DNA of 64,000 bases, taken from positions 9,672,001 through 9,736,000 of the forward strand of contig NC_043022.1 in the NCBI RefSeq assembly GCF_006345805.1, given 5' to 3'. The notes under the pieces were generated by a model. The model was not told where the DNA came from. It searched no databases and saw nothing but the letters and a program-made list of their open reading frames with translations. Made by a program: the position numbers and the translations under genes. The DNA comes from Octopus sinensis. Taxonomy: Eukaryota. Of this stretch, positions 12,739 through 31,665 are shown piece by piece (within the stretch, counting starts at the first letter, position 1; the number at the start of each line of letters is the position of its first letter).

Positions 12739-12749
12739 TGTACACACAC

Positions 12750-12804
<55 letters not shown>

Positions 12805-13078: not shown

Positions 13079-13118
<40 letters not shown>

Positions 13119-14264: not shown

Positions 14265-14309
<45 letters not shown>

Positions 14310-15363
14310 CACTGTGTTTTCCAGCATACAGTTCAAATTTTTTTCAGACCAAAATTTACTGCTGAAAAAGCCAGGCTAACTTGTACACCAAAACTACTTT
14401 GGAGAACCAAAAATTCCATCCAACATGTAGAAGGGTTTAGAGATATTATGTTGACTTGTATGCCTGAAAATATGGTGTGTGTGTATGTGTGCGAATGCAC
14501 ACATGAATGCATGTGTTTCTATACATACATATGCACATACATACATGTACCTAACTGTATCTTCCAACATGTAAGTCTAATTTTTTCTGGACAAAATTGA
14601 CTGCTAACGATGGTAGATCAACTTATCAACCAATGTGACATTAGAAGAGCAAAACCTCCATGTGAAATGCCACATGATTTTCAAAGATAGTGACAATGCT
14701 TGAATGTTTACCCTACATATTTACCCTATATACTATGTCAACTTGTATGCTGGAAAAAAACAAGGGTTTTGCTGCAAGCATGACTCAGTTACTCTTATTA
14801 ATGATTTGGCGGGATACAGTATTTCATTATGCAACCATGATGTACTATATGATGTATTGTGTTAGCTGTGTGCTTTACATCACTTGTTAAGGTTTTCGCT
14901 GTAGCTCATCATCAGCATCATTTAATGCCCACGTTCCATGCTGGCATCTGTTGGATGGTTTGACAGGAGCTGGTGAAATGAAGATCTGCACCAGGTTCCA
15001 GTTTGATATGGCATGGTTTCTGGGGCTGGATGCCCTTTCTAATGTCAATCATTCCCATAGTGTAATCTGTGCTTTAGTATGTGCCACCTGCATGGGTGCC
15101 ATTTATATGGCACCTGCGGCAGCTATGACTATGATTTCATCTGTGCCATTTGCATGATGCTAGCAATGTTAGTGATTATGGTTTCACTTGGCTTGACGAA
15201 TCTTCTCAAGCACAACGTACCTCCAATGTTTCTGCCACTTTGGTTGGTCTGAGGTTATAGTAGAAGACACTTGGCCAAGGTGCCATGCAGTGAGGCTGAA
15301 CTAGGAACCATGGATGTAAACAGGGATGTAAACACACCAATATTGGCTGTCAAGTGGTAGTGG

Positions 15364-15394
<31 letters not shown>

Positions 15395-16035
15395 CACACA
15401 CACATAAATATAGATAGTAGATAGACAGACAGACAAATAGATATAGACAGACAGATGGATAGATACATAGATAGATAGATGGACAGACGGATGGACAGAC
15501 AGACAAATAGGTAGTTAGATAGATAGACGGACAGACAGACAGACAGACAGACAAAATATGGCATGTACGCCCATTACCTTTTTTCCATCTTTGTTCTCAT
15601 TGCTTGTTTGCTTCTGATGTCATAACAGAATCAATTTTGGCTGCAGAGAAAACCTTAACAAGTCATTTACTCATTTTTCAATCAGCCATGTTTAGGGGCC
15701 ACTTTTTATTATTAATTTTTCATATTTTTCTGAAGTATATTTTGTACATGCTTGGAAAAGTGAAGAAAGTTTCTGAAAAACCAAATAAGTCTTTTATTTT
15801 CTCCCTTGCTTATTATTAATTCTAAATCTCACCTGGCTTATCATTTTGCAGCTTACTGATTTTTAATTTGAGGAATTACTAACATTTAATTAATTAATTT
15901 TTTTTATTCATTTTACACTATGTTTTATATGATGGGATGTTTCTTGCGTTCTTCTGTTTTATTTTTAAGAAATGTTTATTTATTATAAAATTATTAGTAT
16001 TGTTATTATTAGCAAGTGGTGTTATGTTTACCGTG

Positions 16036-16207
16036 TTAACGGGCCATTTTTCTGTGCCTACCACTGTACATACAACAGGTGGTCATTAGCAACCCGAAGA
16101 TGGTAATTCCACACAGAGAATAGATGATATACGGATCTGCACTATCTGGCATCGGTTCTGTCACAACCAGTTTTGTTGTCTGCAGCAGGAGAGTCTCTTT
16201 CCAGCAA
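16036..16207 (-). CDS. FAM187A: Nested FAM187A-like gene, terminal exon (Ig2 end, TM helix, short tail, stop)
   Basis: ttttgtacag|T completes Ser. Encodes CWKETLLLQTTKLVVTEPMPDSADPYIIYSLCGITIFGLLMTTCCMYSGRHRKMAR* with TAA at 16038-16036. The six exons sum to 1464 nt = 487 aa + stop. Not in the ORF track. Confidence 0.87.
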
Positions 16208-16270
16208 CTGTACAAAAGATTCCATTATGAATTTTTTGGTTTGTTGTTGTTATTATTATTATTATTATTA

Positions 16271-16472
16271 AGGTGGCAAGCTGGCTGAATCGTTAACATG
16301 CTGGATGAAATGCTTAGCAATATTACGCAGGTTGCTATGTTCCAAGTTCAAATTCCACCGGGAAAATAAATACCAATTGAACACTGGGGTTGATGTAATC
16401 TATTTATCCCCTCTCCTAAAACTGCTGTCCTTGTGGCAAAATTTGAAGCCATTATTATTATTGTTATTATTA

Positions 16473-16512
<40 letters not shown>

Positions 16513-16735
16513 CATTATCAAGTGGTGACCTGGCAGAGCTGTTAGCATGCTAGGTGAAATGCATAGCAGTATTTCATCTGTTGCTATATTCTGAGTTCAA
16601 ATTCCACCATGGTCGACTTTGCGTTTTATCATTTCGTGGTTGATAAATTAAGTACCAGTGAAACACTGGGGTCAATGTAATCGACAATCCCTTCCCATCG
16701 AATTTCAGGCCTTGTGCTTATAGGAGAAAGGATTA

Positions 16736-16769
<34 letters not shown>

Positions 16770-16985
16770 AGGTAGCGACCTGGCACAGTTGTTAGCACGC
16801 TGGGCAAAATGCTTAGTGGCATTTCATCTGTCTTTGTGTTTTGAGTTCAATCTATGCCGAGGTCGATTTTTATCTTTCATCCTTTCGGGGTCGATTAAAT
16901 AAGTACCAGTTATGCACTGGGGTTGATGTAATTGACTTACATCCTCCCTGCAAATTTCAGGCTTTGTGCCTACTGTAGAAAGATT
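16271..16985 (+). mobile_element. Three head-to-tail SINE family B copies separated by (ATT)n
   Basis: Copies at ~16271-16445, 16522-16735 and 16770-16985. Confidence 0.75.
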
Positions 16986-17080
16986 AGCATCATCATCATC
17001 ATCATAATAAGAAGGTGGTGAGCTGGCAGAAATAAGTAAAAGATAAACGATATGTATGTATATATGATATGTACATAGTA

Positions 17081-17118
<38 letters not shown>

Positions 17119-17334
17119 GTATATATTTAGGTGTCTGTGTTTGTCCCCCCACCATCACTTGATAACTGATGTTGGTGTGTTTATGTCTCCGTAACTTAGC
17201 GGTTCAGCAAAAAAGATGGATAGGACAAGTCCAGGGTTCGATTTGTTTGACTTAAAGGCAGTGCTCCAGCATGGCCGCAGTCAAATGACTGAAACAAGTA
17301 AAAGAATAAAAGAATACATATGTAAGTATGTATA

Positions 17335-17675
17335 GAAGCAGGAGTGGCTGTGTGGTAAATAGCTTGCTCACCAACCATATGGTTCCGGGTTCAGTCCCAC
17401 TGCATGGCACCTTGAGCAAGTGTCTTCTTCTATAGCCTTGGTCTGACCAAAGCCTTGTGAGTGGATTTGGTTGACGGAAACTGAAAGAAGCTTGTATATA
17501 TGTATATATGTGTGTGTGTTTATATGTTTGACAACCGATGCTGTAACTTAGCGGTTCACCAAAAAGAGACCAATAAAATAAGTACTAGGCTTACAAAGAA
17601 TAAGTCCTGGGGTCGATTTGCTCGACTAAAGGCGGTGCTCAAGCATGGCCACAGTCAAATGACTGAAACAACTAA
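17335..17675 (+). mobile_element. SINE family A
   Basis: Head gcaggagtggctgtgtggtaa through tail gactgaaacaac; preceded by an isolated tail at ~17120-17310. Confidence 0.7.
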
Positions 17676-18009
17676 AAAAAAAAAAAATGAGATGTGTACA
17701 AAGTTTGTTGCTAAAACTAGTTTCCGGTTTGCCAAACGTACACAAGTGGAAGCAGATTGCATCCAGCTTCGTGGTTGCTAGTTGAAACACCTGCTGTTGG
17801 TGACTAGCAGCAAGCTGGTCACGTGTTTCAGTTTTACTTGTATTGACTGTAGCTTATTGTGTTGGGTGCCTAAAGCAAGCATTGAAGTGGAAGCATCTGG
17901 CCAGCTATATCACTAGGTGGGAAAGGGGTACGAGTGTTGTCCAGATGCAGGTCCTCCCACGCGGAAAATCGTTGGTGCTAGCCTGTTTAAGTGTGTAAAC
18001 ATATGGTTA

Positions 18010-18590
18010 AGAACTAGTGATGTAACAGTCATAACAATGATGAAGGTGATGATGATGATAATGATGATGGTTGTGGTGGAGGTAGTGGTCATGACGACAA
18101 TGCTGGTCATGATGATCATGATGAGGATGGATGATGATGGTCATACTGATGATGATAGTGATGATGATGGTGATGGTCTTAATGATGATGGTGATGATGA
18201 TGATGATGATAATAATGATGGTGGTGGAGGTAGTGGTCATGACGACAGTGGCGGTCATGATGATCATGATAAGGATGGATGGTGGTGGTCATACTGATGA
18301 TGATAGTGATGATAATGGTGATGATGATGGTGATGGTGGTGGTGGTGGTGGTGGTGGTAATGGTGGTGGAGGTAGTGGTGATGACGACAGTGGCGGTCAT
18401 GATGATCATGATGATGATGGATGATGGTGGTCATACTGATGATGGTCATAATAATGATGATGATGGTGATGGTCTTAATGATGGTGGTGGTGGTGATGAT
18501 GATGATAATGATGGTCATAATGACAATGATGATGATGATCATGATGGTCACAATGAGAACAGTGTTAATTATAGTTCCAGTAGATAATGA
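18010..18590. repeat. Compound (GAT/GGT)n low-complexity tract with a ~150-bp superperiod
   Basis: ggtggaggtagtggtcatgacgaca...ggatggatg..ggtcatactgatgatg recurs three times; followed by (TAA)n to ~18900. Confidence 0.85.
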
Positions 18591-18726
18591 TGTTAATTAA
18601 TAATATTACTAATGACGGTGACTAATAATATAATTATCTAATGTAACTGGGGTGCTGATGATGACGGTGATAACTAACGATGACAGCATTGAAGAGAATA
18701 GCCAGAATAGACATGATGACAGTATG

Positions 18727-18759
<33 letters not shown>

Positions 18760-19009
18760 GTAATATAATAATAATAATAATAATAATAGTAGTAGTAGTC
18801 GTAATAATAAAAATATAATAAAAATAATAATAATAATAGTAATAATAATAATAATAATAATAATGATAATTCAAAAAATAATAATAATAATAATGATTTC
18901 CTCATTAACCACAAGGGTTTACATTAAGAAAAGCATTATGGACAGTACAGGGCAAAACAAAGAATGTGTGTATGTGTGAGAGCGTGTGTTTTTGTGAGGG
19001 TAATTATAA

Positions 19010-19557
19010 CAATCCTTTCTACTAAAGGCACATAGTCTGAAATTTTGGGGGAAGGGGATAGTTGATTTCATCGACCCCCATGGTTTCACTGGTACTTAAT
19101 TTATCGACCTTGAAAGAATGAAAAGCAAAGTCGACCCTGATGGAATTTGAACTTGCAATGTAAGGGTGGATGAAATACTGTCAAGCATTTTGCCCGGCGT
19201 GCTAACAATTCTGCTAGCTTGGCGCCTTAATAATAATAATAATAATAATAATCGTAATAATAAGCAAATAATAGCAAAAGGGACTGATTGTTACCTAACT
19301 CAGATACCAGGAAACCTAAAAATGGCAGAAATTCAAAAGATAGTGCTCATGGGAACTGCTCATATCCTACGCAAAATACTTTCTTTTTAAAACAAACATA
19401 ATTTTCGTATAGTTTTTTTAGGCATTCACTAGTACAACACTAAGTACAAAACCAAATATATGGCACCCTAGGCATAACACCAACACGAACTTCCAACTTG
19501 TTGTCTCTTGAGGTCTCTGGGTGAGACTTGGAGCCAGCTTGTGCAAATGTAAACATG

Positions 19558-19594
<37 letters not shown>

Positions 19595-19817
19595 CCTCCT
19601 CCTCCTTTCCGCTATAGGCACAAGGTCTGAAATTTTTGGGGAGTGGGATAGTTGTTTGCATTGATCCCAGTGTTTCATTGGTATTGAATTTATTGACCCC
19701 GAAAGGATGAAAGGCAAAGTTGACTGGTTGAATTTGAACTCCCAACGTAGCAGCAGATGAAATACTGTTAAGCATTTCACCTTGTGTGCTAATGATTTTG
19801 CCAGATTGCCACCTCCC

Positions 19818-19849
<32 letters not shown>

Positions 19850-20335
19850 CAATAACAAGAACAACAACAACCCCTTTCTACTATAGGTGCAAGGCCTGAA
19901 GTTTGGGGAGGGGGATAGTCGATTATTTCGACCCCAGTACGAAACTGGTACTTTATTTATCGACCCCGAAAGGATGAAAGGCAAAGTTGACCTCGGTGGA
20001 ATTGAACTCAGAACGTAGCGGCAGATGAAATACCCCTAAGCATCTTGCCCGGTGTGCTAACGATTCTTCCAGCTCAACACCTTAAAAAAAAAAAAATAAT
20101 AATAATAATATATTTCTTTACTACCCACAAGGGGCTAAACACAGAGGGGACAAACAAGGACAGACAAACGGATTAAGTCGATTACATCGACCCCAGTGTG
20201 TAACTGGTACTTAATTTATCGACCCCAAAAAGATGAAAGGCAAAGTTGACCTCGGCGAAATTTGAACCCAGAACGTAACGGCAGACGAAATATGGCTACG
20301 CATTTCGCCTGGCGTTAGCACACCGGGCGAATGAA
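19010..20335 (-). mobile_element. Cluster of four SINE family B copies separated by (TAA)n
   Basis: Copies at ~19010-19225, 19600-19815, 19870-20082 and 20110-20335. Further copies at ~34337, 39884, 44591, 47630 and 57890. Confidence 0.75.
19262..19560 (+). mobile_element. R4/Dong-like element extreme 3' end within (TAA)n
   Basis: YLTQIPGNLKMAEIQKIVLMGTAHILRKILS* plus 3' UTR; (TAA)n on both sides. Confidence 0.7.
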
Positions 20336-20359
20336 ATAGTCAATATCATTACGGCTCAC

Positions 20360-20506
20360 CTGTATATCGAAGTGTCTGTGAACTGAGTATTTCTGATGTG
20401 AAGTGAATTAGTGACGTCAATAAACACCCGTCCTCTCGTTTTGCGGCTCTCTAGGAAATGTTTCAGTGGTGCTGACCTATTCTGCCATCGGATAATATCC
20501 TCATCT
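20360..20506 (-). CDS. FAM187A: Nested FAM187A-like gene, exon 5 (Ig domain 2)
   Basis: ttatgacag|A acceptor, AG|gtgagc donor; 147 nt, phase 2/2. Encodes DEDIIRWQNRSAPLKHFLESRKTRGRVFIDVTNSLHIRNTQFTDTSIY, close to recalled FAM187A [23 protein letters not shown]. Confidence 0.88.
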
Positions 20507-20689
20507 CTGTCATAAACAGGAAAAAAAAAAAACAGAAAAAAAATATGTACGAAGAAGCTTGCTTCCCAGCCACATGGTCCTAGGTTCAATCCCACTGCCT
20601 GACACCACCCTAGGCAAGTGTGTTCTACTGTAGCCACCAACCAAAGCCTTGTGAGTGGATTTGGTTGATGGAAACTGAAAGAAGCCAAT

Positions 20690-20702
<13 letters not shown>

Positions 20703-20749
<47 letters not shown>

Positions 20750-20808
20750 ATATATATAATATATATATATGTATGTATGTATATATATATATATATATAA
20801 TATATATA

Positions 20809-20849
<41 letters not shown>

Positions 20850-20935
20850 TATATATGTATGTATATATATATATATGTATGTATATATATATATATGTAT
20901 GTATATATATATATATATGTATTATATATATATAT

Positions 20936-20966
<31 letters not shown>

Positions 20967-21101
20967 GTATATGTATATATGTATATGTATATATATGTAT
21001 ATATTATATATGTATATATATATATATATATATGTATGTATATATATAATATTATGTATATATAATATATGTATATATATATATGTATATATATATATAT
21101 G

Positions 21102-21146
<45 letters not shown>

Positions 21147-21159
21147 GTATATATATATG

Positions 21160-21193
<34 letters not shown>

Positions 21194-21205
21194 ATATATA
21201 TATAT

Positions 21206-21254
<49 letters not shown>
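20703..21254. repeat. Long (TA)n/(TATG) microsatellite
   Basis: Visible dinucleotide tract; similar tracts at ~30960-31238, 38990-39660 and 49480-49915. Confidence 0.95.
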
Positions 21255-21259
<5 letters not shown>

Positions 21260-21378
21260 TACAAATTTAAGGTGAATACTTGATAAGTGAAGGCACCTGT
21301 ATACCTATTATGGGTAATGCTACATGTACTTTTCATATTTTTCATAGTGTGATGTAACTCTTTGGAATAATAATGCAT

Positions 21379-21469
21379 GCGGCTGAAGAGAGCTTTAAAC
21401 CATCTTTTATATCTATTATACACTGATGAAAGAACAGGTCGTTTATAAAGCTTGAAACACGTGTACCGC
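21379..21469 (+). ncRNA. Type I hammerhead ribozyme motif (Penelope-like), core intact
   Basis: Stem I GCGG(21379-82)/CCGC(21466-69); core CTGAAGA(21383-89); stem II GAGCTTTA(21390-97)/TAAAGCTT(21446-53); GAAA(21454-57); C-ACGT-G stem III; GTA cleavage triplet (21463-65). Confidence 0.7.
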
Positions 21470-22058
21470 TACATCCTTTGTGTTCTGTTTTTGATTCTAT
21501 TTGTTATATATATATATATATATATACATACACACACACACATAGATGTGGCAGTATGGTAAGAAGCTTGCTTCATAACCACATGGTTCTGGGTTCAGTC
21601 CCATTGCATGACACCACCCTGGGCAAGCATTGTGAGTGGATTTGTTTGATGGAAACTGAAAGAAGCCTGTTGTTGTGTGGATGTATGTATATCTATATCT
21701 GTCTGTCTGTCTACATAGATGTGTCAGTGTGGTAAGAAGCTTGCTTCCCAATCACATGGTTCATGGTTCAGTCCCACTGCATGGCAGCTTGGACAAGTGT
21801 ATTCTAATATATCCTTGGGCCAACCAAAGCCTTGTGCATGGCTTTCGTAGACAGAAACTGAAAGAAGTTTGTCATATATCCATATGTGTGTATGCCTTTG
21901 TGTTAGTGTTTGTGTCCCTCCCCACCTGACAATTGGTGTTTGTGTGTTTACATCCCCATAACTTATCAGTTTGGCAGAAGAGACTGATGGAATAAGTACT
22001 AGGTTTAAAAAAAACCTAGTCATTCAACTAAAATTCTTCATGGTGGTGCCACAGCATG

Positions 22059-22375
22059 TTTGTTGTTGTTGTTGTTTGTTCCTTCTTGATCCATGCCTGG
22101 CTCATAAGGGCCGGTTTCCCGGTTTCTTGGCGTATAGGTCCCCCATTTTGACGGGACGCCGGTCCGTCGCAGGTGAGCTGCAAGATGCAGGAGGAAAGAG
22201 TGAGAGAAAGTTGTGGCGAAAGAGTCAGCAGAAGTTTGCCATTACCTTCTGCCGGAGCCGCGTGGAGCTTAGGTGTTTTCGCTCATAAACACACACATCG
22301 CCCGGTCTGAGATTCGAACCCGCGATCCCTCGACCACGAGTCCGCTGCTCTAACCACTCAGCCATGTGCCTCCAC
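22059..22375 (-). mobile_element. tRNA-derived SINE family C1 with 13-bp TSD
   Basis: A box TGGCTGAGTGGTTAG, B box GGTTCGAATCTC, (AAC)n tail; GTGCCACAGCATG at 22046-22058 and 22376-22388. Confidence 0.85.
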
Positions 22376-22434
22376 GTGCCACAGCATGGCCACAGATTAA
22401 TTACTGAAAGAAGGAAGGGATAAAAGATACTCAC

Positions 22435-22769
22435 GTGCGACATCTAATTATGACGTCACTGCCCTTCGTTGTGTAGATCACGTCACGTATTACAGGGCGG
22501 GCCAGTTTCCGTTTTTGATGGAGCGACAAGTAGCCTGCATTCACGACTTCTACCACCTTTCCTGACTGGTCTTTAATGATTGTACTGGCTGCTTTCTTAG
22601 GGCATGCCACCTTACACTTGTTGTAAAATACTTCGTTGGGGCGTGACTTGATTGCTGGGAGTTCCCGTATCTGCTCAGGCAAGGCAGTTGACTGACAAGA
22701 TAAACTTCCATTAAAGTAATAAAATATGTAGATGTCGACTGGCCTTACTGGAGCACTCTTATTAAGTTT
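22435..22769 (-). CDS. FAM187A: Nested FAM187A-like gene, exon 4
   Basis: ttcattacag|AAA acceptor, AC|gtgagt donor; 335 nt, phase 0/2. Encodes KLNKSAPVRPVDIYIFYYFNGSLSCQSTALPEQIRELPAIKSRPNEVFYNKCKVACPKK...VIYTTKGSDVIIRCR. Confidence 0.85.
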
Positions 22770-22869
22770 CTGTAATGAAGGAATGGGGATGTAGTATACA
22801 TTTATAATTCATAATTTATAATTAACAATACTTTAGCATTTCAAGACAGTAAAGACCCGACAAATAAAG

Positions 22870-23575
22870 TGAGTTCATGGCTCGCAGGATGGCTTGCTAT
22901 GCTAACCTTTGGATTGTAGGGTGACCCGTTGTGCTTGAGGAGATCTATTGAGTCAAGTACATTAACATCAACATCAAAATAAGAATCAAATGGAAATTGT
23001 AGCGATACCTGTGCTGGTGGCACGTAAAAAGCACCGTCCAAATGTGGCTGATATCAGCGGCGCTTGACTGGCGTCCGTGTCAGTGACAGGTATAAAGCAC
23101 CAAGGCGGCGAGCTGGCAGAAACGTTAGCACGCCGGGTGAAATGCTTGGCGGTATTTTGTCTGTCGTTACGTGGTGAGTTCAAATTCCGCTGAGGTCGAC
23201 TTTGCCTTTCATCCTTTCGGGGTCGATAAATTAAGTACCAGTTACGCACTGGGGTCAATGTAATCGACTTAATACCTATGTCTGTCCTTGTTTGTCCCCT
23301 CTATGTTTAGCCCCTTGTGGGTAATAAAGAAATAGGTATAAAGCACCAACCGATCATGGCCATTTGCCAACCTCCTCTGGCTCCTGTGCTGGTGGCATGT
23401 AAAAAGCACCTACTACACTCACGGAGTGGTTGGCGTTAGGAAGGGCATCCAGCTGTAGAAACACTGCTAGATCAGACTGGAGTCTGGTGCAGCCTCCTAG
23501 TTTCCCAGACCCCGGTCAAACCGTCCAACCCATGCTAGCATGGAAAACGGATGTTAAACGATGATGATGATGATA
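22870..23575 (+). mobile_element. RTE LINE 3' UTR copy interrupted by a SINE
   Basis: 3' UTR from gattgtagggtgacc...gagatctattgagtcaagtac to a gatgatgat tail; split at 23104-23333. Confidence 0.75.
23104..23333 (+). mobile_element. tRNA-derived SINE family B with 16-bp TSD
   Basis: GGCGGCGAGCTGGCAGAAACGTTAGC...GAGTTCAAATTCC...CTTTCATCCTTTCGGGGTCGATAAATTAAGTACCAG; flanked by AGGTATAAAGCACCAA at 23088-23103 and 23334-23349. Confidence 0.85.
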
Positions 23576-24049
23576 AGCTGGCAGAATTATTAATACATAG
23601 AGCAAAATGCTTAGTAACATTTTGTCAATCTTTACATTCTGAGTTCAAATTCCACTGAGGTCAACTTTTCATCTTTTATGGGGGCGGGGGTCAATGAAAT
23701 AAATACCAGTTAAACACTGGGGTTGATGTAATCGCCTTATACTTGCCTCTGAAATTGCTGGTCTTTGCCAAACAAATTTCAAATTATCATTGTCATCATC
23801 ATCATTGTATTGATATTATTATGATTATTAACATCCTTCCAGTGGGTATGGTGGTATGTTAGCGAGTCCCTCCCGACCCACCAGTGGGTTGTTTCTTAAT
23901 TTCTTTCCTATGGGCTTTCTGAGAGGTATGGTACAGTGTAAAAATATTACACCACTCATGTCAAAATTAATTAAGATATCGTACTGGGACCCTGTGATAA
24001 AACATAAAATGAGCCAACGTGTTAAAATAGTTTGTTATTATTATTATTG

Positions 24050-24420
24050 AGTCAAGTACACCAACATCAAAAATCAATGGAAATTGTAGTTGTGATACCC
24101 ATGCCGGTGGCACATAAAAAGCACCATCTGAACGTGGCCAATGCCAACGCCGCCTTGACTGGCTTCCATGCCGGTGGCACGTAAAAAGCACCAATCCGAT
24201 CGTGGCCGTTGGCAGCCTTGCCTGGCACCTGTGCCGGTGGCACGTAAAAAGCACCCACTACACTCACGGAGTAGTTGGCGTTAGGAAGGGCATCCAGCTG
24301 TAGAAACACTGCCAGATCAGACTGGAGCCTGGTGCAGCCTTCTGGCTTCCCAGATCCTCAGTCGAACTGTCCAACCCATGCTAGCATGGAAAGTTGACGC
24401 TAAATGATGATGATGAAGAT
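24050..24420 (+). mobile_element. RTE LINE 3' UTR copy
   Basis: gagtcaagtac...three gtgccggtggcac(a/g)taaaaagcacc units...ggcgttaggaagggcatccag...gatgatgat. Confidence 0.78.
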
Positions 24421-24643
24421 AGATTAAAAGATAGATTGGTATATATAAAACTGTTTTCTACAGTGAAGGGTAATGATATTTTGAGTGGATATATCTGATT
24501 TCCACAGCAAAAGGGGTAAAATCAAGTATAAAATAGTGTGGCTTATACACGAGTTAATACAGTATCACCTGTAATGATAAAGAAAAGGATGAAATGAATG
24601 TTTAAAACTAACAGGATCTGTTTAAATGTTATGGTTATGTTAA

Positions 24644-25233
24644 CCCTTTAGCATTTAAACCATCTGTATCTTATTTTTTTATTGCCCACAAGGGGCTAAA
24701 CAGAGGGGACAAACAAGGACAGACAAAGGGATAAAGTCAATTACATCGACCTCAGTGTGTAACTGGTACATAATTTATCGACCCCGAAAGGATGAATGGC
24801 AAAGTCGACTTCGGCAGAATTTGAACTCAGAACGTAACGGCAAACGAAATACCGCTAAGCATTTCGCCCGGCATGCTAACGTTTCTGCCAGCTCGCCGCC
24901 TTCAAAACCATCCGTATCTGGCTCAAATTATTCTGTTTTACATTCAAACTGACTAGATTCAGCCTCTCGTACCTATCCTACAATGTCATTCTCAAAATGA
25001 ATAGTCACATCATTGAAATCTTTCCCACCTGGACAGGTGTTTCCACTTCAATGCTTGCTTTAGGGACCCAACACAATAAGCTACAGTTAATACAACTAAG
25101 ATTGAAATATGCGACCAGCTTGCTGCTAGTCACAACACCAGCTGTTCAAGATTTCATGATAATGCGTGTTTAATTCAAAAGAATGTAAATAAATAGACAT
25201 TACACTTGACAGAATAATCTGAATGCTAACGGG
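24644..25233. mobile_element. piggyBac-like MITE with SINE insertion
   Basis: TTAA-CCCTTTAGCATT...AATGCTAACGGG-TTAA; SINE at ~24671-24901. Confidence 0.75.
24671..24901 (-). mobile_element. SINE family B
   Basis: Reverse complement of 23104-23333; imperfect TSD aaaccatc(t/c)gtatc. Confidence 0.8.
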
Positions 25234-25366
25234 TTAAATGCTGTGAGATTCTTGCAAGCTTATGGAGGACCCGAAACATAGGTTTTGCAGTTCTGTATTT
25301 AAGAGATGAAGAATTATTTACATTATTTACATTTGACAGGTATTTGTCCACTGCTTGTTTGTTGTT

Positions 25367-25412
25367 AACACAACGTTTTGGCTGATATACCCTCCAGCAT
25401 TCGTCAGGTGTC
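25367..25412 (-). ncRNA. Degenerate minimal hammerhead motif (G12->A)
   Basis: Minus strand: GACAC-CTGACGA-A-tGCTG-gagggtatat-CAGCc-AAAAC-GTT-GTGTT. Stems I and II pair, but GAAA reads AAAA. Confidence 0.5.
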
Positions 25413-25709
25413 TTGGGGAAATTTTAAACCTGGGTTCTCATTCCTAAGGTATTTTTCGATGTTATTATTATTATTACTATTATTATTCAGGTCACTGCTT
25501 GGAATCGAACTCGGAATTTTGGGGTTAGTAGCCCGCGCTCTTAACCACTATGCCATATGCTCATGGGCATATGTAAATAATGTAGGTTTTGCAGTTGTAT
25601 TTGTTTTGGAGCAGTGGAACCTTGACATGGTGTTATCCCACTTAGGTACTTCTTAGGAGGCTTAGAAGAGAATACCTTTGAAAATTATATTGTTCGTTTC
25701 ATCTGGTCT

Positions 25710-25960
25710 CCGTGCCGGTGGCATGTAAAAAGCACCATTCGATCGTGGTCGTTTGCCAGCCTCATCTGGCACCTGTGCCAGTGGCACGTAAAAAGCACCC
25801 ACTACACTCACGGAGTGGTTGGCGTTAGGAAGGGCATCCAGCTGTAGAAACACTGCCAGATCTGACTGGTCTGGTGCAGCCTTCTGGCTTCCCAGATCCC
25901 AGTTGAACCGTCCAACCCATGCTAGCATGGAAAGCGGATGTTAAACGATGATGATGATGA
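25710..25960 (+). mobile_element. RTE LINE 3' UTR copy
   Basis: Well-preserved 3' end with (GAT)n tail. Confidence 0.75.
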
Positions 25961-26553
25961 TACTTGTTACTTCTTCAATCTTGAGAGTTATCTGCTAGTT
26001 TTTCTTTACCCACCTACACTCTTAGTTCTTCTTTTCCAGCACACTTTAACTTGAACTTTGAGGAACCACCTGGACTCGAAGCCCCCTATTAATCATTCTC
26101 ACTTTCTCTCTCTCCTAAAGGTGAATTACCATGTAGCTCATCTACAAGGACCTGTTTGCCCTTTACTCCTCCTTCTTCATATTTTATTTGCTTATATCCT
26201 TGAGATGGTATAAGCCCACTTAGGTACTATGCAGGAGTCTTAGGAGAGAACACCTTTGGAACTTATATTTTTTGCTATACCCTTGTCACTTCTTCATTCT
26301 TAAGAACTGCTATCAGTTAGTTTTTCTTTATACACCCACATTCCTAGTTCTTCTGTTCCATCACACTTTAGCTCAAATTCAAACTTTGATGAACCACCTG
26401 GACTTGAAGCTCCTACCAATAATTCTCTCTCTGTGTCTCTGCCTGTTGCTCTGTCTCACTCTCCCTCCTGAAGGTGAATTACCATGTAGCTTCTCTACTA
26501 GAACCTACTTGCCCCTTTCTCCTTCTCTTTCATATTTTATATCTGCTTATATA

Positions 26554-26955
26554 GGCGCAGGAGTGGCTGTGTGGTAAGTAGCTTGTTTACCAACCACATG
26601 GTTCCGGCTTCATTCCCACTGCGTGGCACCTTGGGCAAGTGTCTTCTACTATAGCCCCGGGTCGACCAAAGCCTTGTGAGTGGATTTGGTAGACGGAAAC
26701 TGAAAGAAGCCCATCGTATATATGTATATATATGCGTGTGTGTGTTTGTGTGTCTGTGTTTGTCCCCCTAGCATTGCTTGACAACCGATGCTGGTGTGTT
26801 TATGTCCCCGTTACTTAGCGGTTCGGCAAAAGAGACCGATAGAATAAGTACTGGGCTTACAAAAGAATAAGTCCCGGTGTCGAGTTGCTCGATTAAAGGT
26901 GGTGCTCCAGCATGGCCGCAGTCAAATGACTGAAACAAGTAAAAGAGTAAAAGAG
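26554..26955 (+). mobile_element. tRNA-derived CORE-like SINE, family A (full length)
   Basis: A box TGGCTGTGTGG, B-box-like GGCTTCATTCCC (GGTTCAGTCCC in other copies), CORE-like CACCTTGGGCAAGTG, central microsatellite, tail ...gactgaaacaagtaaaagag. More than 12 copies in the window. Confidence 0.8.
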
Positions 26956-27517
26956 TTATGTCTTATACCCTTGTATAACTCCTACTACCTCCACCCAATT
27001 TTTCTAGTCTTGTGAGCTACTTGGTAGCCCCATTAGTACTGGCGTCATGAAAAAGCAGCCAGTACACTCTGTAAAACGTTTGGTGTTTGGAAGGGCACCA
27101 GCCATAGAAACCATACCAAACCAAACCAGACAGTAGAGCACACTGGGGTCCTTGAGCCCATTGGATCTTGTCAAACCATTCAGCCCATGGCATTATTGAA
27201 CATGGATGATGCAAATGATGATGATGATGATGATGATGATGAAGTGAACACACTTGACTAAAACAGAAACAGCCATGCCCGGACCCTATACATGCACAAA
27301 TGTACATACATGCTCAAAAAATACATAAACTTAAGTGACTCAACTGGAAAAGAAATTGAAGAAATTTTATGAAAATTACTGAATACTTTCAGTTTTGATA
27401 GACTTTGTCTGAAAGATCACCACACAGCCTTATCTAAAGAACGAAAGAGATTTTTTATTAAAATTTCTTTGCTGGGGTGAGTTGTTGAAAAAATAGAGTT
27501 AATGGAGAAATATTTAC

Positions 27518-27667
27518 CTTTATTGAGCAAAGACCAATTTTTCTCCGAAATCCTTCTTTCCCACACTCACTGCATTTGCTCCAGTTTGACCAGGTACTGA
27601 ATATTTTCAAATTGTTACTTGTTAGGTGTTTCATTGTTAGAAGGCTTTTTGTAGTGTTCTCGATAAC
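27518..27667 (-). CDS. FAM187A: Nested FAM187A-like gene, exon 3 (WxxWxxCxxCG segment)
   Basis: cactgctag|GTT acceptor, AAG|gtaaat donor; 150 nt, phase 0/0. Encodes VIENTTKSLLTMKHLTSNNLKIFSTWSNWSKCSECGKEGFRRKIGLCSIK, paralleling recalled human FAM187A [25 protein letters not shown]. Not in the supplied ORF track. Confidence 0.88.
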
Positions 27668-27707
27668 CTAGCAGTGAAACAAGTATAATTAAGCAAGTCA
27701 GAGTAAC

Positions 27708-27765
<58 letters not shown>

Positions 27766-27769
27766 CATC

Positions 27770-28230
27770 ATTGCCTTTGCACAGCTTCTAACGCTGGAGA
27801 TGTACTACAGTGTCAGTTGTTCACTACTAGTGAACAAAGGTAACGCCTTTATTTTTAGAGCACCTTTCGGAGCATTTGAGCGGTTCCAAGCAGTGCTATT
27901 TTCTGGAAGTGCTCCACCCTTATTGCAGCCCCTTTTTGCTCCACGTACTTTTCAAGATTTTTGCTCACCGTTCCCAGGGCTCTGACAATTATTGGTACTA
28001 TTGCTACCTTTTTCATCAACCACAACTGCTTAACTTCCCAAGCTAACCTGTCATCTCTCTCAAATTTTCTTTCTTCCTTATCGCATACCTTGTTGTCAGC
28101 TGGGCATGCTATATCTATGATCCAGCATAGTTTGTTTCCTTTCTCAATTAAGACTATGTTTGGCTTCCTATTCTCTATCTCATGGTTGCACTGAATCATA
28201 AAATCCTATAGCTCAAAAACCTCCTGGCCC
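27770..28230 (-). mobile_element. R4/Dong-like non-LTR element 3' end (restriction-like endonuclease remnant)
   Basis: RKPNIVLIEKGNKLCWIIDIACPADNKVCDKEERK...VPIIVRALG...FQKIALLGTAQMLRKVL is a PD-(D/E)xK-type RLE C-terminus; 3' end abuts (TAA)n at 27713-27770. Confidence 0.8.
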
Positions 28231-28269
28231 ATTTTTTTTCATCCATCTGCTCTCATCCACACAAAGTTC

Positions 28270-28660
28270 ATACTTAATCAGTGTACTCATCATATAATCT
28301 GTCCCTCATTCTGAGGGAGGAGCCCTTTCTTACCAACAAAGGCAGAAACTCTCCGAACATCACCCAACCCATTCTTATTCTAGTAGCTACACCCTCAGAA
28401 CATCCCCTTCCACTGTTCACTTGGTCACCTAAGAAACAGACACTGTCTGCTATTTCTGAGGATCCCACCTGACATTTGATGAAGTCTATTTTTCTGTCTG
28501 TTTCTAGTGTTTAATTGTACCTGTACACCTGACACACACAAAGACTATTTCCCCTCTTAACCCTCCTCTGATGTTGCTACATCACTAATGTGTCCATAGC
28601 TTGCACTGGGTACACCTTATGGAGTTTCTACATCCACCTTTTCTACATATTGACCAGGGC
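28270..28660 (-). mobile_element. Decayed fragment of the same RTE LINE ORF2
   Basis: WPWSICRKG..NSIRCTQCKLWTH and DSVCFLGDQVNSGRGCSEGVATRIRMGW align with the 56-57 kb copy; ends at a (CT)n tract. Confidence 0.75.
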
Positions 28661-28661
28661 C

Positions 28662-28737
<76 letters not shown>

Positions 28738-28944
28738 ACGCACACATACGCACCACAGAATGGTCGTGGCTGGAATGCCTTTGATCATAGGTATGTTGTA
28801 CTATTACTTTGGCTGCTGCATTGTTACTACTACTACTACTACCACCACCACCACCACAACAACAACAACAACAAACATGCTTCCAGACCATGTAAAATAT
28901 CAAAATATACAAAATATAAAAAAAAATTCAAGTCAGTTTAATAC

Positions 28945-29182
28945 CGCATGGAATTGGACGCTTGTCACTGTTGTTAGATGGTGGATGGCTTCATATTGAT
29001 TTCTTTTGATGCAGTAATAATAACCATCCAGATCACTGTTAATTGCTTTGATGATTAAGTCCCGCTTTGGAGTTATTTTGTAGTTTCCATTGGATTGGAT
29101 GTGAGAAAGTACTGTTCCTTTCTCCTGGAGATGTTGCCAGGTCACTCTTGTCTTCATTTCAGTTGTGGTCCCTGGTTTAAAA
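28945..29182 (-). CDS. FAM187A: Nested FAM187A-like gene, exon 2 (Ig domain 1)
   Basis: tccttcag|T completes Cys; GCG|gtatta donor; 238 nt, phase 2/0. Encodes FKPGTTTEMKTRVTWQH...DLIIKAINSDLDGYYYCIKRNQYEAIHHLTTVTSVQFHA, with the Ig C-W-DxGxYxC signature. Confidence 0.85.
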
Positions 29183-29432
29183 CTGAAGGACATACAAGCA
29201 CATATATATATAAAGACATAAATAACAGATAAATATTTTGATGAACTTTTATGTAACAATAAGTAAGATCGTAAAATGATGACAAATTGTTTCATAGCTC
29301 AAAAACATGCAGTTAGTTTATATTATCATAGTTGATGCTAGGAGAATGAGAGGAATAAAAATCTGAAGGCTTTCTCTGTGGTTAATCAAGGACAAGGACA
29401 ACAGTATTTTTTCATCCTGCCTCTAGAACAAC

Positions 29433-29474
<42 letters not shown>

Positions 29475-29498
29475 CACCCACTCCACATATAGACTCAC

Positions 29499-29920
29499 CA
29501 TTGGTGACATTTCAATAATACTCTTTGGCCAGGCTTTGTGATGTAGGTTTGATAGACAGATCTTCCTCGTGTGTGGGTTCTTTTTATGCAGTCATAGTAC
29601 TGCGTTAACAAGTCCATCGTGAGGGTGTATGGAAGTTTGTTGTGCCTTTGGTTGTTCAATTTGTAGACATCATCTACGTTGTTGAGGCTCCGTCTCACAA
29701 ACATAGCGGATTCCTGTGCCGTTTTCTCATGGACCCCGGGTAACTTCATTTCTGGCACCCCAAGCCAAGTTTCGAGGTCTTTCTCTCCATTTCCACTCAC
29801 ATTACTGACTCCACTTCTCGCATGTCCTACACATTCGGTCTTTATTATCTGAGCCAGGAAAATAACAAAGCACAATTGTCCAAAGATTGAGGAAAAGTAA
29901 AACTTCTTTCTTGCAAACAT
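29499..29920 (-). CDS. FAM187A: Nested FAM187A-like Ig/TM protein, exon 1 (ATG, signal peptide, start of Ig1)
   Basis: ATG at 29920; hydrophobic N-terminus (FSSIFGQLCFVIFLAQIIKTEC); ends TYITKPGQRVLLKCHQ then TG|gtgagt donor. 422 nt, phase 2. Confidence 0.8.
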
Positions 29921-30357
29921 ATTTTCTGAAACTTTATGAGTTATCTATATTGCTGTTTACTTTGTTATTGCTCGTAGGAACAAACTGTTCCTAGGAGCAA
30001 ACAAGCTGGACTTTTTACTATGGATGCAGTTTATGATTAGCAGTAATATATTGTAAGGAAGCGATTAAATATTGTTAGGAAAGGAGACTATCGTCTGACA
30101 ACTAAGATTCTGTTAAATTTGTAATATTTCGATTTTGAAAGCGATTTAAGAGAACCAGGTATTCTTAGGTTTACAGCGGTTTTTTTATTCTTATTATAAA
30201 GTCAACCTCAAATTCCACCGGGTTTGACTTGGTCTTTCATCCTTGCGGGGTCAGTAACTTAAGTACCAGTGAAACAGGGAATTTGATATAATCGACTTGT
30301 TTCCTCCCCCAAAATTTCAGGCCTTGTTCCTTTAGCAGAAAGGATTATTATTGTTGC

Positions 30358-30416
<59 letters not shown>

Positions 30417-30803
30417 CGTGCTTTCAGTGCATAACTGAATGTAGTGCTCTGTGTCTCATTTCATTTATCTTTTTTTTTTTAATAAAATCTGAGAGAAAAT
30501 TTAGCAATTGAATTTTCTTTTTGTTTGGCTTGTCTGATGGACTAATCAAAGAATTGCCACAACAATTGCTAAATATTTTGCTGTTTCCTATATTCCTGCA
30601 TCATTTCTCTCTTGTGTAATTTCCTTTTATTATTTCTGACGTTTGGTTTATTTTCTTTGTGTGTGTGTGTGTGTGTGTTTCTGGTTTGCTTTTCTTCTTT
30701 TTGTTCCTTCCTTCCTTTCGTCCTTCCTTTCTTTCTTTCTGCCTTTTACTTTGTCACTTTTCTTCCAGTGTCCTGCAATGTCCAATGTTGCTCTATAGTT
30801 TCA

Positions 30804-30817
30804 GTTGCCATGGAGAC
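30804..30817. promoter_or_regulatory. Candidate RFX X-box
   Basis: GTTGCCATGGAGAC (reverse complement GTCTCCATGGCAAC) fits the 14-bp X-box consensus; 884 bp upstream of the nested gene ATG. Confidence 0.45.
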
Positions 30818-31334
30818 ACCTGGTGATGTCATCATGTGTTGCATCATCATTATACTCTGTGATCAACCACACTCTCATGAATGATAAATGGAAGACCATT
30901 CTGTGACATATGGAGAATGTCGGTGTGTGTGTGTGTGTGTCTGCATTTGTGTTTTGTGTAAGTGTATGTTTTATATATGTGTATTCATGCATGTGTGTGT
31001 GTTTATATGTGTGTATATGTATATACATATGTATATATGTATATATATGTATGTATATATATATATATATATGTATGTATATATATATATATATATGTAT
31101 GTATATGTATGTATATATATATGTATGAATGTATGTATATATATATATATATATATATGTACGTATATGTATGTATGTATATGTATATATCTATGTGTAT
31201 ATATATGTATATATATATCTATGTGTATATATATATAATGGGAAAGTTTACAAAAATAAACAAAAGACGACGGCAGGTGGTGTACAAACAAACAAATTTA
31301 TTAGTATAGCGCTCAGGAATAGAAATAGAAAAAG

Positions 31335-31372
31335 TCTTTTACGTTTCGAGCCTACGCTCTTCGACAGAAAGA
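31335..31372 (-). ncRNA. Minimal hammerhead-like motif (core CUGUCGA variant)
   Basis: Minus strand: TCTTT-CTGTCGA-A-GAGC-gtag-GCTC-GAAAC-GTA-AAAGA. 5-bp stem I, 4-bp stem II; inside a ~270-bp insert between (TA)n tracts. Confidence 0.55.
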
Positions 31373-31620
31373 TACACAGAAAAAAACAAGGAGAGAAAAA
31401 AATGCATGTAGGAGCTAACGATCTATCATGGCGTCCTGACTTCGGACAGTGGTCAGACGTGAGAAGGACAGTAGGGGAGATAACAGGGTCAAGTGACTTC
31501 CAAAACGAAGGTGGCCCCAACATATATAGAACTGTATATATATTTATGTGTATGTGTATATATATGTATGTATATGAATACATATATATGTATATGTATA
31601 TATATATATATTATATATAT

Positions 31621-31665
<45 letters not shown>

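What the first reader, a model, noticed from the sequence alone, without database searches (positions are those of the whole stretch)
16036..29920. Complete six-exon Ig-superfamily gene nested antisense in an EPS15 intron
All five introns have GT-AG ends with compatible phases, giving an uninterrupted 487-aa type I membrane protein. The layout is signal peptide, Ig1, WSNWSKCSECG segment, Cys linker, Ig2, TM and an ~11-aa tail. Motifs match human FAM187A as recalled. Two exons (27518-27667, 16036-16207) are absent from the ORF track, so automated annotation could miss or fragment it. It lies wholly within the intron between EPS15 exons 9653 and 33552, raising possible transcriptional interference or mutually exclusive expression (inference).
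Basis: partly seen in the sequence, partly recalled or inferred. Interest (0 to 1): 0.72.

Follow-up and report, generated by a model that had tools for sequence, protein, structure and literature searches.

The report
Octopus FAM187A gene inside EPS15 intron

Summary
Minus-strand exons 29920-29499, 29182-28945, 27667-27518, 22769-22435, 20506-20360 and 16207-16036 join through five GT-AG introns (phases 2,0,0,2,2) into a 487-aa ORF. That protein is 100% identical over its full length to the NCBI protein 'Ig-like V-type domain-containing protein FAM187A [Octopus sinensis]'. The window is Octopus sinensis CM016884.1. The worry that annotation would miss the gene is therefore unfounded here.

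The architecture fits the published FAM187 definition: signal peptide, Ig-like domain 1, a TSR-like Trp/Cys/Arg module, a Cys linker, Ig-like domain 2, a transmembrane helix and a short tail.

The host is EPS15. The gene lies antisense in the intron between the last EH3 exon (ends 9653) and the 'DFSAIKELD' exon (starts 33552). The same nesting, orientation and six-exon structure occur in Haliotis rufescens and Patella vulgata. They were not found in the bivalves, apogastropods, annelid, nemertean or hemichordate checked.

By homology (2026 preprints: FAM187A/SPE-40 knockouts are male-sterile in mouse, zebrafish and C. elegans), the likely function is a sperm-surface fertilisation factor. Expression in octopus was not testable. 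Verdict: correct, already known, low to moderate interest.

The parts
29499..29920 (-). FAM187A exon 1 (422 nt): ATG, signal peptide (aa ~7-27), poorly conserved N-terminal region with two predicted helices, and the first strands of Ig-like domain 1 up to C138. Ends in phase 2.
   Evidence: donor TG|GTGAGT; hydrophobic window at aa 7-27; AF2 helices 66-89 and 98-118, strands from 122.
28945..29182 (-). FAM187A exon 2 (238 nt): rest of Ig-like domain 1 (C141, W156, G194-x-Y196-x-C198).
   Evidence: acceptor ttcag|T, donor GCG|gtatta; these residues invariant or >=90% conserved in the family.
27518..27667 (-). FAM187A exon 3 (150 nt, phase 0-0): the TSR-like module STWSNWSKCSECGKEGFRRKIGLC.
   Evidence: (W249 and C252 in 48/48; W246 43/48; C255 and C267 47/48). 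(Pfam TSP_1 reaches only 15.7 bits, cut-off 21.6). Exon length is identical in Haliotis.
22435..22769 (-). FAM187A exon 4 (335 nt): Cys linker (C295, C322, C326) and the first strands of Ig-like domain 2 up to C380.
   Evidence: tblastn to Haliotis exon 4, 37% identity, E=3e-18; identical length of 335 nt in Haliotis.
20360..20506 (-). FAM187A exon 5 (147 nt, phase 2-2): core of Ig-like domain 2 (W389, R408, D426, Y430).
   Evidence: Pfam Ig_3 at 370-432, 33.3 bits against a cut-off of 30.
16036..16207 (-). FAM187A exon 6 (172 nt): C432 of Ig2, the last strand, a transmembrane helix (aa ~455-477), a tail of about 10 aa, and the TAA stop at 16038-16036.
   Evidence: helix 454-486; identical length of 172 nt in Haliotis.
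15979..15984 (-). First AATAAA polyadenylation-signal match, 51 nt downstream of the stop. It implies a short 3' UTR that stays inside the host intron.
   Evidence: motif match only; usage not shown.
9654..33551 (+). EPS15 host intron (23,898 bp), which contains the whole FAM187A coding region on the opposite strand.
   Evidence: donor ATG|GTTTGT at 9653/9654; acceptor CATCAG|GATGGT at 33551/33552; the annotated 868-aa 3xEH gene spans the locus on the opposite strand.
9476..9653 (+). EPS15 exon encoding the C-terminal half of EH domain 3 (…SLCDIKSTGKLNAEQFALAMYL…AGPAAFGVM).
   Evidence: Pfam EH, 61.3 bits; best solved match is EPS15 EH3, 1c07, 3.9e-33.
5985..6139 (+). EPS15 exon encoding the N-terminal half of EH domain 3, including the EF-hand loop DTDMDGFVSGKE.
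33552..33646 (+). EPS15 exon DGTNSGPYSHVADFSAIKELDTITKDIDDMK, the start of the central region. It is 78-88% identical to the homologous exons of Haliotis and Patella.

Best explanation
Window 16036-29920 (minus strand) is the Octopus sinensis orthologue of FAM187A/SPE-40. It encodes a 487-aa type I membrane protein with this layout: cleavable signal peptide; a poorly conserved helical N-terminal stretch; Ig-like domain 1; a family-wide conserved thrombospondin-repeat-like module (W-x-x-W-S-x-C-x-x-C-G-x-x-G-x-R-x-R-x-G-x-C); a three-cysteine linker; Ig-like domain 2; one transmembrane helix; and a basic tail of about 10 residues.

Shown here: the gene model, its identity to the public annotation, the fold, family membership, purifying but relaxed selection, and the genomic position.

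Inferred from homologues: it most likely sits on the sperm surface as part of the ancient DCST1/2-TMDD1-FAM187 fertilisation machinery and is needed for sperm-egg adhesion or fusion. This rests on mouse, zebrafish and C. elegans knockouts, which are male-sterile with otherwise normal sperm.

The gene lies antisense inside the EPS15 intron that separates the last EH3 exon from the first exon of the central region. That arrangement was inherited from the common ancestor of cephalopods and gastropods. Most likely it persists as a passively retained nested pair rather than through a regulatory interaction (inference).
For: - Gene model.
- Match to annotation: 100% identity and coverage with NCBI 'FAM187A [Octopus sinensis]', 86% with O. 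bimaculoides, 33% with Haliotis. The window equals GCA_006345805.1 CM016884.1 and the annotated span equals 16036-29920.
- Family size and names: 456 representative clusters at E<=1e-3 and 64 at E<=1e-30. Hits are named FAM187A in molluscs, a nemertean, arthropods and the hemichordate Saccoglossus. BLASTP against Saccoglossus FAM187A gives 7e-29 over aa 73-473.
- Architecture: Pfam Ig_3 above threshold for Ig2, with sub-threshold Ig hits for Ig1. AF2 with a 148-sequence alignment gives pLDDT 85 and pTM 0.72, with beta domains at 122-222 and 364-447 and a helix at 454-486. Foldseek top hits are multi-Ig adhesion molecules, E~1e-11. Only two hydrophobic segments exist, at aa 7-27 and 457-477. 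This matches the FAM187 definition in the SPARK preprint (signal peptide, two Ig-like domains, TM, short tail, section 38).
- Function of homologues: 10.64898/2026.05.13.724128 and 10.64898/2026.05.14.723898.
- Selection: dN/dS 0.51.
- Nesting: EPS15 exons flank the gene on the opposite strand in Octopus, Haliotis L001, Patella L011 and, on one side, O. bimaculoides L004. Exon phases are identical and three exon lengths are identical between Octopus and Haliotis.
Against: - No expression data of any kind could be consulted. Transcription, testis specificity and the UTRs are unverified.
- The sperm role is transferred across more than 500 My from three model species.
- Human FAM187A and C. elegans SPE-40 were not compared directly, so orthology rests on intermediates and on NCBI naming.
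- dN/dS of 0.51 is high. That fits a reproductive protein but also fits relaxed constraint.
- The nesting was not found in the two apogastropods, two bivalves, annelid, nemertean and hemichordate examined. It is therefore dispensable. Its age depends on those genes being orthologues rather than paralogues, and on the absence of EPS15 exons beyond the 10-kb flanks.
Confidence: 0.85

Rival explanations
1. The antisense nesting is functional. FAM187A transcription in the male germ line and EPS15 transcription interfere with each other or are co-regulated (mutually exclusive expression, antisense control of EPS15 splicing around the EH3/central-region junction), and this keeps the pair together.
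For: The same intron, same orientation and same six-exon structure are retained in Octopus, Haliotis and Patella, lineages that separated in the Cambrian. In Patella the nested gene nearly fills the ~9.3-kb host intron.
Against: No EPS15 exon was found within 10 kb of the gene in Batillaria, Biomphalaria, Sinanodonta, Solemya, Owenia, Lineus or Saccoglossus, so the two genes do well apart. The coding exons of the two genes do not overlap: they are 6.4 kb and 3.6 kb apart in Octopus. Nested pairs are hard to separate without breaking the host, which alone explains long retention. No expression data are available.
Confidence: 0.1
2. The protein is a FAM187-family member, but in cephalopods it works somewhere other than sperm (for example as a neuronal or epithelial adhesion molecule), so the fertilisation role does not transfer.
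For: Foldseek and PDB profile hits are to neural Ig adhesion molecules such as contactin, sidekick, Dscam and Robo. No octopus expression data were available. An invertebrate chordate immune-response paper mentions FAM187A 14 times (not read).
Against: Those structural hits are generic IgSF matches with low global TM-scores. Loss-of-function phenotypes are sperm-specific in a nematode, a fish and a mammal, which argues for an ancestral bilaterian role. The fast evolution (dN/dS 0.51, 86% identity between two Octopus species against 97% for the neighbouring EPS15 exon) is typical of gamete-recognition proteins.
Confidence: 0.12
3. The model is a computational artefact or a decaying pseudogene. 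The exons are relics, and the identical NCBI protein simply reflects the same ab initio reasoning.
For: RefSeq invertebrate models can be purely predicted. dN/dS is not low (0.51). Introns are full of repeats.
Against: The 487-codon ORF is intact with identical exon lengths in two Octopus species. Synonymous changes are in excess over the neutral expectation (38 against ~24). All family-invariant Cys and Trp residues are present. All splice sites are canonical. Exon phases are conserved with Haliotis. AF2 gives a confident fold.
Confidence: 0.03

Closest known systems
FAM187A / FAM187B (vertebrates) and SPE-40/FAM187 (C. elegans Y37E11AR.7): sperm fertilisation factors, with FAM187A a member of the SPARK complex
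   Same: Type I membrane topology with a signal peptide, two Ig-like domains, one TM and a very short tail (definition in 10.64898/2026.05.13.724128, section 38). Sequence homology runs through named FAM187A proteins of protostomes and a hemichordate. NCBI names the identical protein FAM187A.
   Different: - At 487 aa the octopus protein is longer than the 413-aa Saccoglossus FAM187A. It carries an extra, poorly conserved N-terminal stretch of about 45 residues that Haliotis lacks (low pLDDT at aa 28-64).
- The C. elegans paper describes only one Ig-like domain.
- Neither preprint, in the parts read or term-searched, mentions the TSR-like module (no occurrence of 'thrombospondin' in the SPARK preprint).
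- No functional data exist for any mollusc.
- The vertebrate SPARK partners IZUMO1, SPACA6 and TMEM81 are vertebrate-restricted, so only the DCST1/2-TMDD1 core could be shared.
Thrombospondin type 1 repeat (TSR, Pfam PF00090)
   Same: The W-x-x-W-S-x-C-S-x-C-G…R-x-R-x-G-x-C signature resembles the Trp/Arg ladder and first cysteines of a TSR. A weak profile match covers TSP_1 positions 1-25, and there is a weak match to the F-spondin TSR 1vex. The motif is conserved in 43-48 of 48 family members.
   Different: The score is below the Pfam threshold (15.7 against 21.6 bits) and only the first half of the 49-residue model is matched. The spacing is C-S-x-C-G rather than C-S-x-x-C-G, so the POFUT2 O-fucosylation consensus is absent (my reading of the motif). 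It is not a certified TSR domain.
Evolutionarily conserved antisense nested genes (e.g. TIMP genes inside synapsin introns; OMG/EVI2A/EVI2B inside an NF1 intron; from my own knowledge)
   Same: A small tissue-specific gene lies entirely within one intron of a larger, broadly expressed host on the opposite strand. The relationship is retained over very long evolutionary time.
   Different: I found no report of this pair (FAM187A in EPS15) in the searchable literature. It was seen here only in Octopus, Haliotis and Patella, and was not found in the other seven taxa checked.
EPS15 / EPS15L1 (endocytic adaptor; the host gene)
   Same: The annotated host product has three EH domains. The window's EH peptide matches the solved human EPS15 EH3 domain best. 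The 'DFSAIKELD' exon follows it, as in vertebrate EPS15 (the vertebrate comparison is from my own knowledge).
   Different: In humans, neither EPS15 nor EPS15L1 hosts FAM187A or FAM187B (my recollection of the human map; not tested here).

Membership tests
FAM187 (FAM187A/B, SPE-40) | N-terminal signal peptide | tested here: met
   A basic n-region (MFARKK) is followed by a hydrophobic window at aa 7-27, one of only two in the protein, and AF2 predicts a helix at 5-26. No dedicated signal-peptide predictor was available.
FAM187 (FAM187A/B, SPE-40) | Ectodomain with two Ig-like domains | tested here: met
   Ig2: Pfam Ig_3 scores 33.3 bits against a cut-off of 30 at aa 370-432. Ig1: only sub-threshold Pfam hits (Ig_6 23.4, Ig_2 21.3 bits), but a confident AF2 beta-sandwich at 122-222 (pLDDT >90) and conserved C138/C141, W156 and Y196-x-C198. 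Foldseek matches multi-Ig proteins at E~1e-11.
FAM187 (FAM187A/B, SPE-40) | Single transmembrane helix followed by a short cytoplasmic tail | tested here: met
   Hydrophobic window at aa 457-477, AF2 helix at 454-486, then SGRHRKMAR and the stop.
FAM187 (FAM187A/B, SPE-40) | Significant full-length sequence similarity to recognised FAM187 proteins | tested here: met
   Identical to the NCBI record named FAM187A. BLASTP against Saccoglossus kowalevskii FAM187A gives 7e-29 over aa 73-473. Profile hits include proteins named FAM187A in Lineus, Centruroides, Bacillus rossius, Trachymyrmex, Eumeta, Patella and Biomphalaria.
FAM187 (FAM187A/B, SPE-40) | Orthology to human FAM187A (A6NFU0) and C. elegans Y37E11AR.7 by reciprocal search and phylogeny | not tested
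   Neither sequence was returned by any tool. The link rests on intermediates and on the bilaterian distribution stated in the SPARK preprint.
FAM187 (FAM187A/B, SPE-40) | Sperm/testis expression and a requirement for fertilisation | not testable with these tools
   No transcriptome or proteome data for octopus are reachable. Evidence exists only for mouse, zebrafish and C. elegans.
Thrombospondin type 1 repeat (PF00090) | Match to the TSP_1 profile at or above Pfam's gathering score over the whole ~50-residue repeat | tested here: not met
   15.7 bits against a cut-off of 21.6, E=0.018, with only profile positions 1-25 of 49 aligned. I therefore call it 'TSR-like', not a TSR.
EPS15 (host gene) | Three N-terminal EH domains followed by a central coiled-coil region; EH3 closest to EPS15 EH3 | tested here: met
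   The annotated host product has 868 aa and three PF12763 hits. The window peptide scores 61.3 bits on Pfam EH. The best solved match is EPS15 EH3 (1c07, 3.9e-33), against intersectin-1 at 5.9e-19. The coiled-coil region and DPF/UIM parts were not examined.
Antisense nested (intronic) gene | The whole coding region lies within one host intron on the opposite strand, with no exon overlap | tested here: met
   The host intron is 9654-33551 (+) and the nested CDS is 16036-29920 (-). UTR extents are unknown. The first AATAAA is 51 nt past the stop.

The most novel reading that the evidence does not exclude
The FAM187A-in-EPS15 antisense nesting may be an unreported, Cambrian-age molluscan synteny block kept together by function. 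One possible form is germline-specific antisense transcription through the EH3/central-region junction, tuning EPS15 isoforms or levels during spermatogenesis. In addition, the family-wide W-x-x-W TSR-like module, which the 2026 preprints do not describe in the parts I read or searched, may be a C-mannosylated interaction surface central to the ancient DCST1/2-TMDD1-FAM187 fertilisation machinery.
Probability: 0.08. Interest if true: 0.55.

Novelty: already known. Interest (0 to 1): 0.25.

Why it matters
The gene itself adds nothing new. It is already in RefSeq under the right name, and the family's role in fertilisation was published in 2026.

The small added value is comparative:

- The octopus carries a full-length, selectively maintained copy of one of the few fertilisation factors conserved across bilaterians. 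That gives a concrete candidate for studying cephalopod sperm-egg interaction.
- Its antisense position inside one particular EPS15 intron is shared with abalone and limpet, so the arrangement is more than 500 million years old. It is a useful synteny marker for mollusc genome evolution.
- The most conserved element of the family is a TSR-like Trp/Cys/Arg module between the two Ig domains. This deserves mention when the family is described only as an 'Ig-like V-type' protein.

Tried and rejected
- An alternative 'exon 4' in the stop-free segments at 27313-27007 (His-run and Cys-containing peptides) was considered and dropped. The acceptor at 22770/22769 continues phase 0 directly, and the resulting exon is homologous and equal in length (335 nt) to Haliotis exon 4.
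- Joining exon 4 directly to exon 6 keeps the frame but deletes the core of Ig2. It was rejected once exon 5 (20506-20360) was found.
- Word-indexed homologue searches with the 3-sequence and 48-sequence alignments returned essentially nothing new. The exhaustive HMMER search was needed.
- AF2 with only three aligned sequences failed (pLDDT 29). It was repeated with 148 sequences.
- The profile search against PDB sequences gave only generic weak Ig hits. No FAM187 structure has been solved.
- Pfam found nothing for the two transposon-like ORFs in intron 2. ARAGORN found no tRNA in 9000-34000, despite a tRNA-like SINE next to exon 4.
- Literature searches for an EPS15 nested gene, or for FAM187 in octopus, found nothing relevant.
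- The 'called genes' table did not list the EPS15 host in Patella. tblastn with the flanking-exon peptides showed it is there.

Full report
**1. What is in the sequence**

Working only from the window, I translated the minus strand and located splice sites. Six exons join through five GT...AG introns, each with a pyrimidine-rich acceptor:

- 29920-29499
- 29182-28945
- 27667-27518
- 22769-22435
- 20506-20360
- 16207-16036

Incoming phases are 0,2,0,0,2,2. The coding sequence is 1464 nt, giving 487 codons plus TAA. Intron lengths are 316, 1277, 4748, 1928 and 4152 nt.

The start codon has A at -3 and an in-frame stop eight codons upstream. The first AATAAA lies 51 nt after the stop.

**2. Provenance and prior annotation**

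The protein is 100% identical over 100% of its length to a 487-aa NCBI/UniRef protein named 'Ig-like V-type domain-containing protein FAM187A [Octopus sinensis]'. Window 6036-39920 is byte-identical to the reverse complement of GCA_006345805.1 CM016884.1:9678036-9711920. The annotated gene span there corresponds exactly to window 16036-29920.

The suggestion that pipelines might miss or fragment it does not hold for this genome.

**3. The protein**

Only two hydrophobic segments exist: aa 7-27, a signal peptide after MFARKK, and aa 457-477, a transmembrane helix. The latter is followed by the tail SGRHRKMAR.

Pfam gives Ig_3 above threshold for aa 370-432 and sub-threshold Ig hits for aa 129-219.

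A first AlphaFold run with three sequences failed (pLDDT 29). With a 148-sequence alignment built from an exhaustive HMMER search, the model reached pLDDT 85 and pTM 0.72. It has beta-sandwich regions at 122-222 and 364-447, a structured middle part, and a helix at 454-486. Residues 28-64 are disordered. Foldseek against the PDB returns multi-Ig adhesion molecules (contactin, sidekick, Dscam, Robo) at E~1e-11 with low global TM-scores. This is a generic IgSF signal.

In a 48-sequence family alignment:

- Invariant residues: C141, W156, W249, C252, C322, C380, W389 and C432.
- At least 90% conserved: C138, G194, Y196, C198, C255, G259, C267, C295, C326, R408, D426 and Y430.

I call it TSR-like only.

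**4. Family and likely function**

The exhaustive search found 456 representative clusters at E<=1e-3. Those with names include FAM187A of the following taxa:

- Haliotis asinina and H. rubra, Patella and Biomphalaria
- the nemertean Lineus
- a scorpion and several insects
- the hemichordate Saccoglossus

Unnamed proteins come from Owenia, Batillaria, Sinanodonta, Solemya, Elysia and Nucella.

Pairwise BLASTP against the Saccoglossus protein gives 7e-29 across aa 73-473.

The architecture equals the definition given for FAM187 in the SPARK preprint: signal peptide, two Ig-like domains, TM and a short cytoplasmic region.

Two 2026 preprints bear on function. They show that Fam187a-null male mice and zebrafish, and spe-40/fam187 C. 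elegans, are sterile because otherwise normal sperm cannot adhere to or fuse with the egg. They also show that FAM187A co-purifies with TMEM81, IZUMO1, SPACA6, DCST1/2 and TMDD1, and they propose that DCST1/2, TMDD1 and FAM187A are the ancient core.

By homology I infer that the octopus protein is a sperm-surface fertilisation factor. This inference is not shown, because no octopus expression data were reachable.

Between O. sinensis and O. bimaculoides the protein is 86% identical and dN/dS is 0.51 (38 synonymous and 75 non-synonymous differences). The gene is constrained but fast-evolving, as gamete proteins often are. The neighbouring EPS15 exon differs at 1 of 96 nt.

**5. The host gene**

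On the + strand the relevant exons are:

- 5985-6139 and 9476-9653, which together encode an EH domain. Pfam EH scores 61 bits, and the best solved match is the third EH domain of human EPS15 (1c07, 3.9e-33), against intersectin-1 at 5.9e-19.
- 33552-33646, which encodes DGTNSGPYSHVADFSAIKELDTITKDIDDMK.

The splice sites at 9653/9654 and 33551/33552 are canonical.

The assembly's annotation shows an 868-aa, three-EH-domain gene spanning the locus on the strand opposite to FAM187A. The FAM187A coding region thus lies wholly within one 23.9-kb EPS15 intron. It is 6.4 kb and 3.6 kb from the flanking exons.

**6. Is the nesting conserved?**

Taxa where the nesting is present:

| Species | FAM187A | Flanking EPS15 exons (opposite strand) |
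|---|---|---|
| Haliotis rufescens (L001) | 10001-17590, + | EH3-end exon 19446-19276; 'DFSAIKELD' exon 7261-7166 |
| Patella vulgata (L011) | exons ~8495-15267, + | 16219-16049 and 6713-6618 |
| O. bimaculoides (L004, 11-kb contig) | starts 3577, + | only the 'DFSAIKELD' exon (1302-1207) is on the contig |

In Haliotis the annotated 864-aa 3xEH gene spans the locus. In Patella the host was not listed in the gene table.

Exon structure is conserved. Octopus exons measure 422/238/150/335/147/172 nt and Haliotis exons 326/232/150/335/168/172 nt, with the same phases.

Taxa where no EPS15 exon lies within 10 kb of the FAM187 gene:

- Batillaria: neighbours are a cobW-domain gene and a GPCR.
- Biomphalaria: neighbours are tubulins.
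- The bivalves Sinanodonta and Solemya: both are next to a Na/Ca exchanger.
- Owenia: an intronless copy inside a MEI1-like gene on the same strand.
- Lineus: an intronless copy.
- Saccoglossus: lies between a dynein heavy chain gene and a ZO-like gene.

The simplest reading is that the nesting existed in the common ancestor of cephalopods and gastropods and was lost in several lineages. Some losses probably occurred through retroposition, given the intronless copies.

There are two caveats. Paralogy was not excluded, and only +/-10 kb was inspected.

Because the pair is dispensable in many lineages and the exons do not overlap, I favour passive retention over a regulatory interaction.

**7. 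Novelty and score**

The gene, its name and the family's function are already public. I found no paper mentioning FAM187 in octopus or a nested gene in EPS15. The conserved nesting and the TSR-like module are therefore small, probably unreported, comparative notes.

A specialist would not be surprised by any of this. Interest is 0.25.

Noticed in passing
L011 (Patella vulgata) 8495-8641 and 9611-9928, against the annotated gene 10001-15270: The annotated Patella vulgata FAM187A product has only 273 aa. tblastn with the Haliotis protein finds two further upstream exons (aa ~61-187) outside the annotated span.
   Followed up: partly
L003 (Owenia fusiformis) 10001-11308; L006 (Lineus longissimus) 10001-11128: The annelid and nemertean FAM187 genes are single uninterrupted ORFs and look like retrogenes. 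The Owenia copy lies inside a MEI1-like (meiosis-related) gene on the same strand.
   Followed up: no
L009 (Sinanodonta woodiana) and L010 (Solemya velum): In both bivalves, which are distantly related, FAM187 sits next to a Na/Ca-exchanger (Na_Ca_ex/Calx-beta) gene. This is a different conserved microsynteny from the EPS15 nesting.
   Followed up: no
window 27518-27667 (protein aa 240-267): The W-x-x-W-S-x-C-x-x-C-G...R-x-R-x-G-x-C module is the best conserved stretch of the whole family (W249 and C252 in 48/48 sequences). W-x-x-W is the consensus for tryptophan C-mannosylation (my own knowledge). The word 'thrombospondin' does not occur in the SPARK preprint, and the parts of the spe-40 preprint that I read describe only an Ig-like domain.
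   Followed up: partly
window 22225-22405 (-), immediately after the exon 4 donor; second copy at 55470-55599: A tRNA-like SINE (GGCTGAGTGGTTAGAGC...GGTTCGAATC box-A/box-B-like sequence) lies about 30 nt downstream of the exon 4 splice donor. ARAGORN does not call it a tRNA.
   Followed up: partly
window 26590-26800 and 14 other places (e.g. 1026-1249, 17371-17530, 20566-20708, 37646-37864): A ~210-bp interspersed repeat occurs 15 times in the window in both orientations at 77-91% identity. Seven copies are inside the EPS15 host intron, and one ends about 60 nt upstream of the exon 5 acceptor.
   Followed up: partly
window 27855-28510 (-), in FAM187A intron 2: Two stop-free segments (116 and 78 aa) resemble, as I recall it, the C-terminal tails of non-LTR retrotransposon ORFs. 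Pfam gives no hit. A weak second copy lies at 57015-57222.
   Followed up: partly
window 29730-29860 (protein aa ~23-66): Octopus FAM187A carries an N-terminal stretch of about 44 residues that is absent from Haliotis. AF2 predicts it to be disordered (pLDDT ~40).
   Followed up: no
window 17900-18900 and 20620-21260: The introns hold long low-complexity tracts: imperfect ATC/ATG-type repeats that give His/Ile/Asp-rich pseudo-ORFs, and a ~640-bp TA-rich (TATA/TATG) microsatellite. These produce many spurious ORFs in both strands of the ORF track.
   Followed up: no
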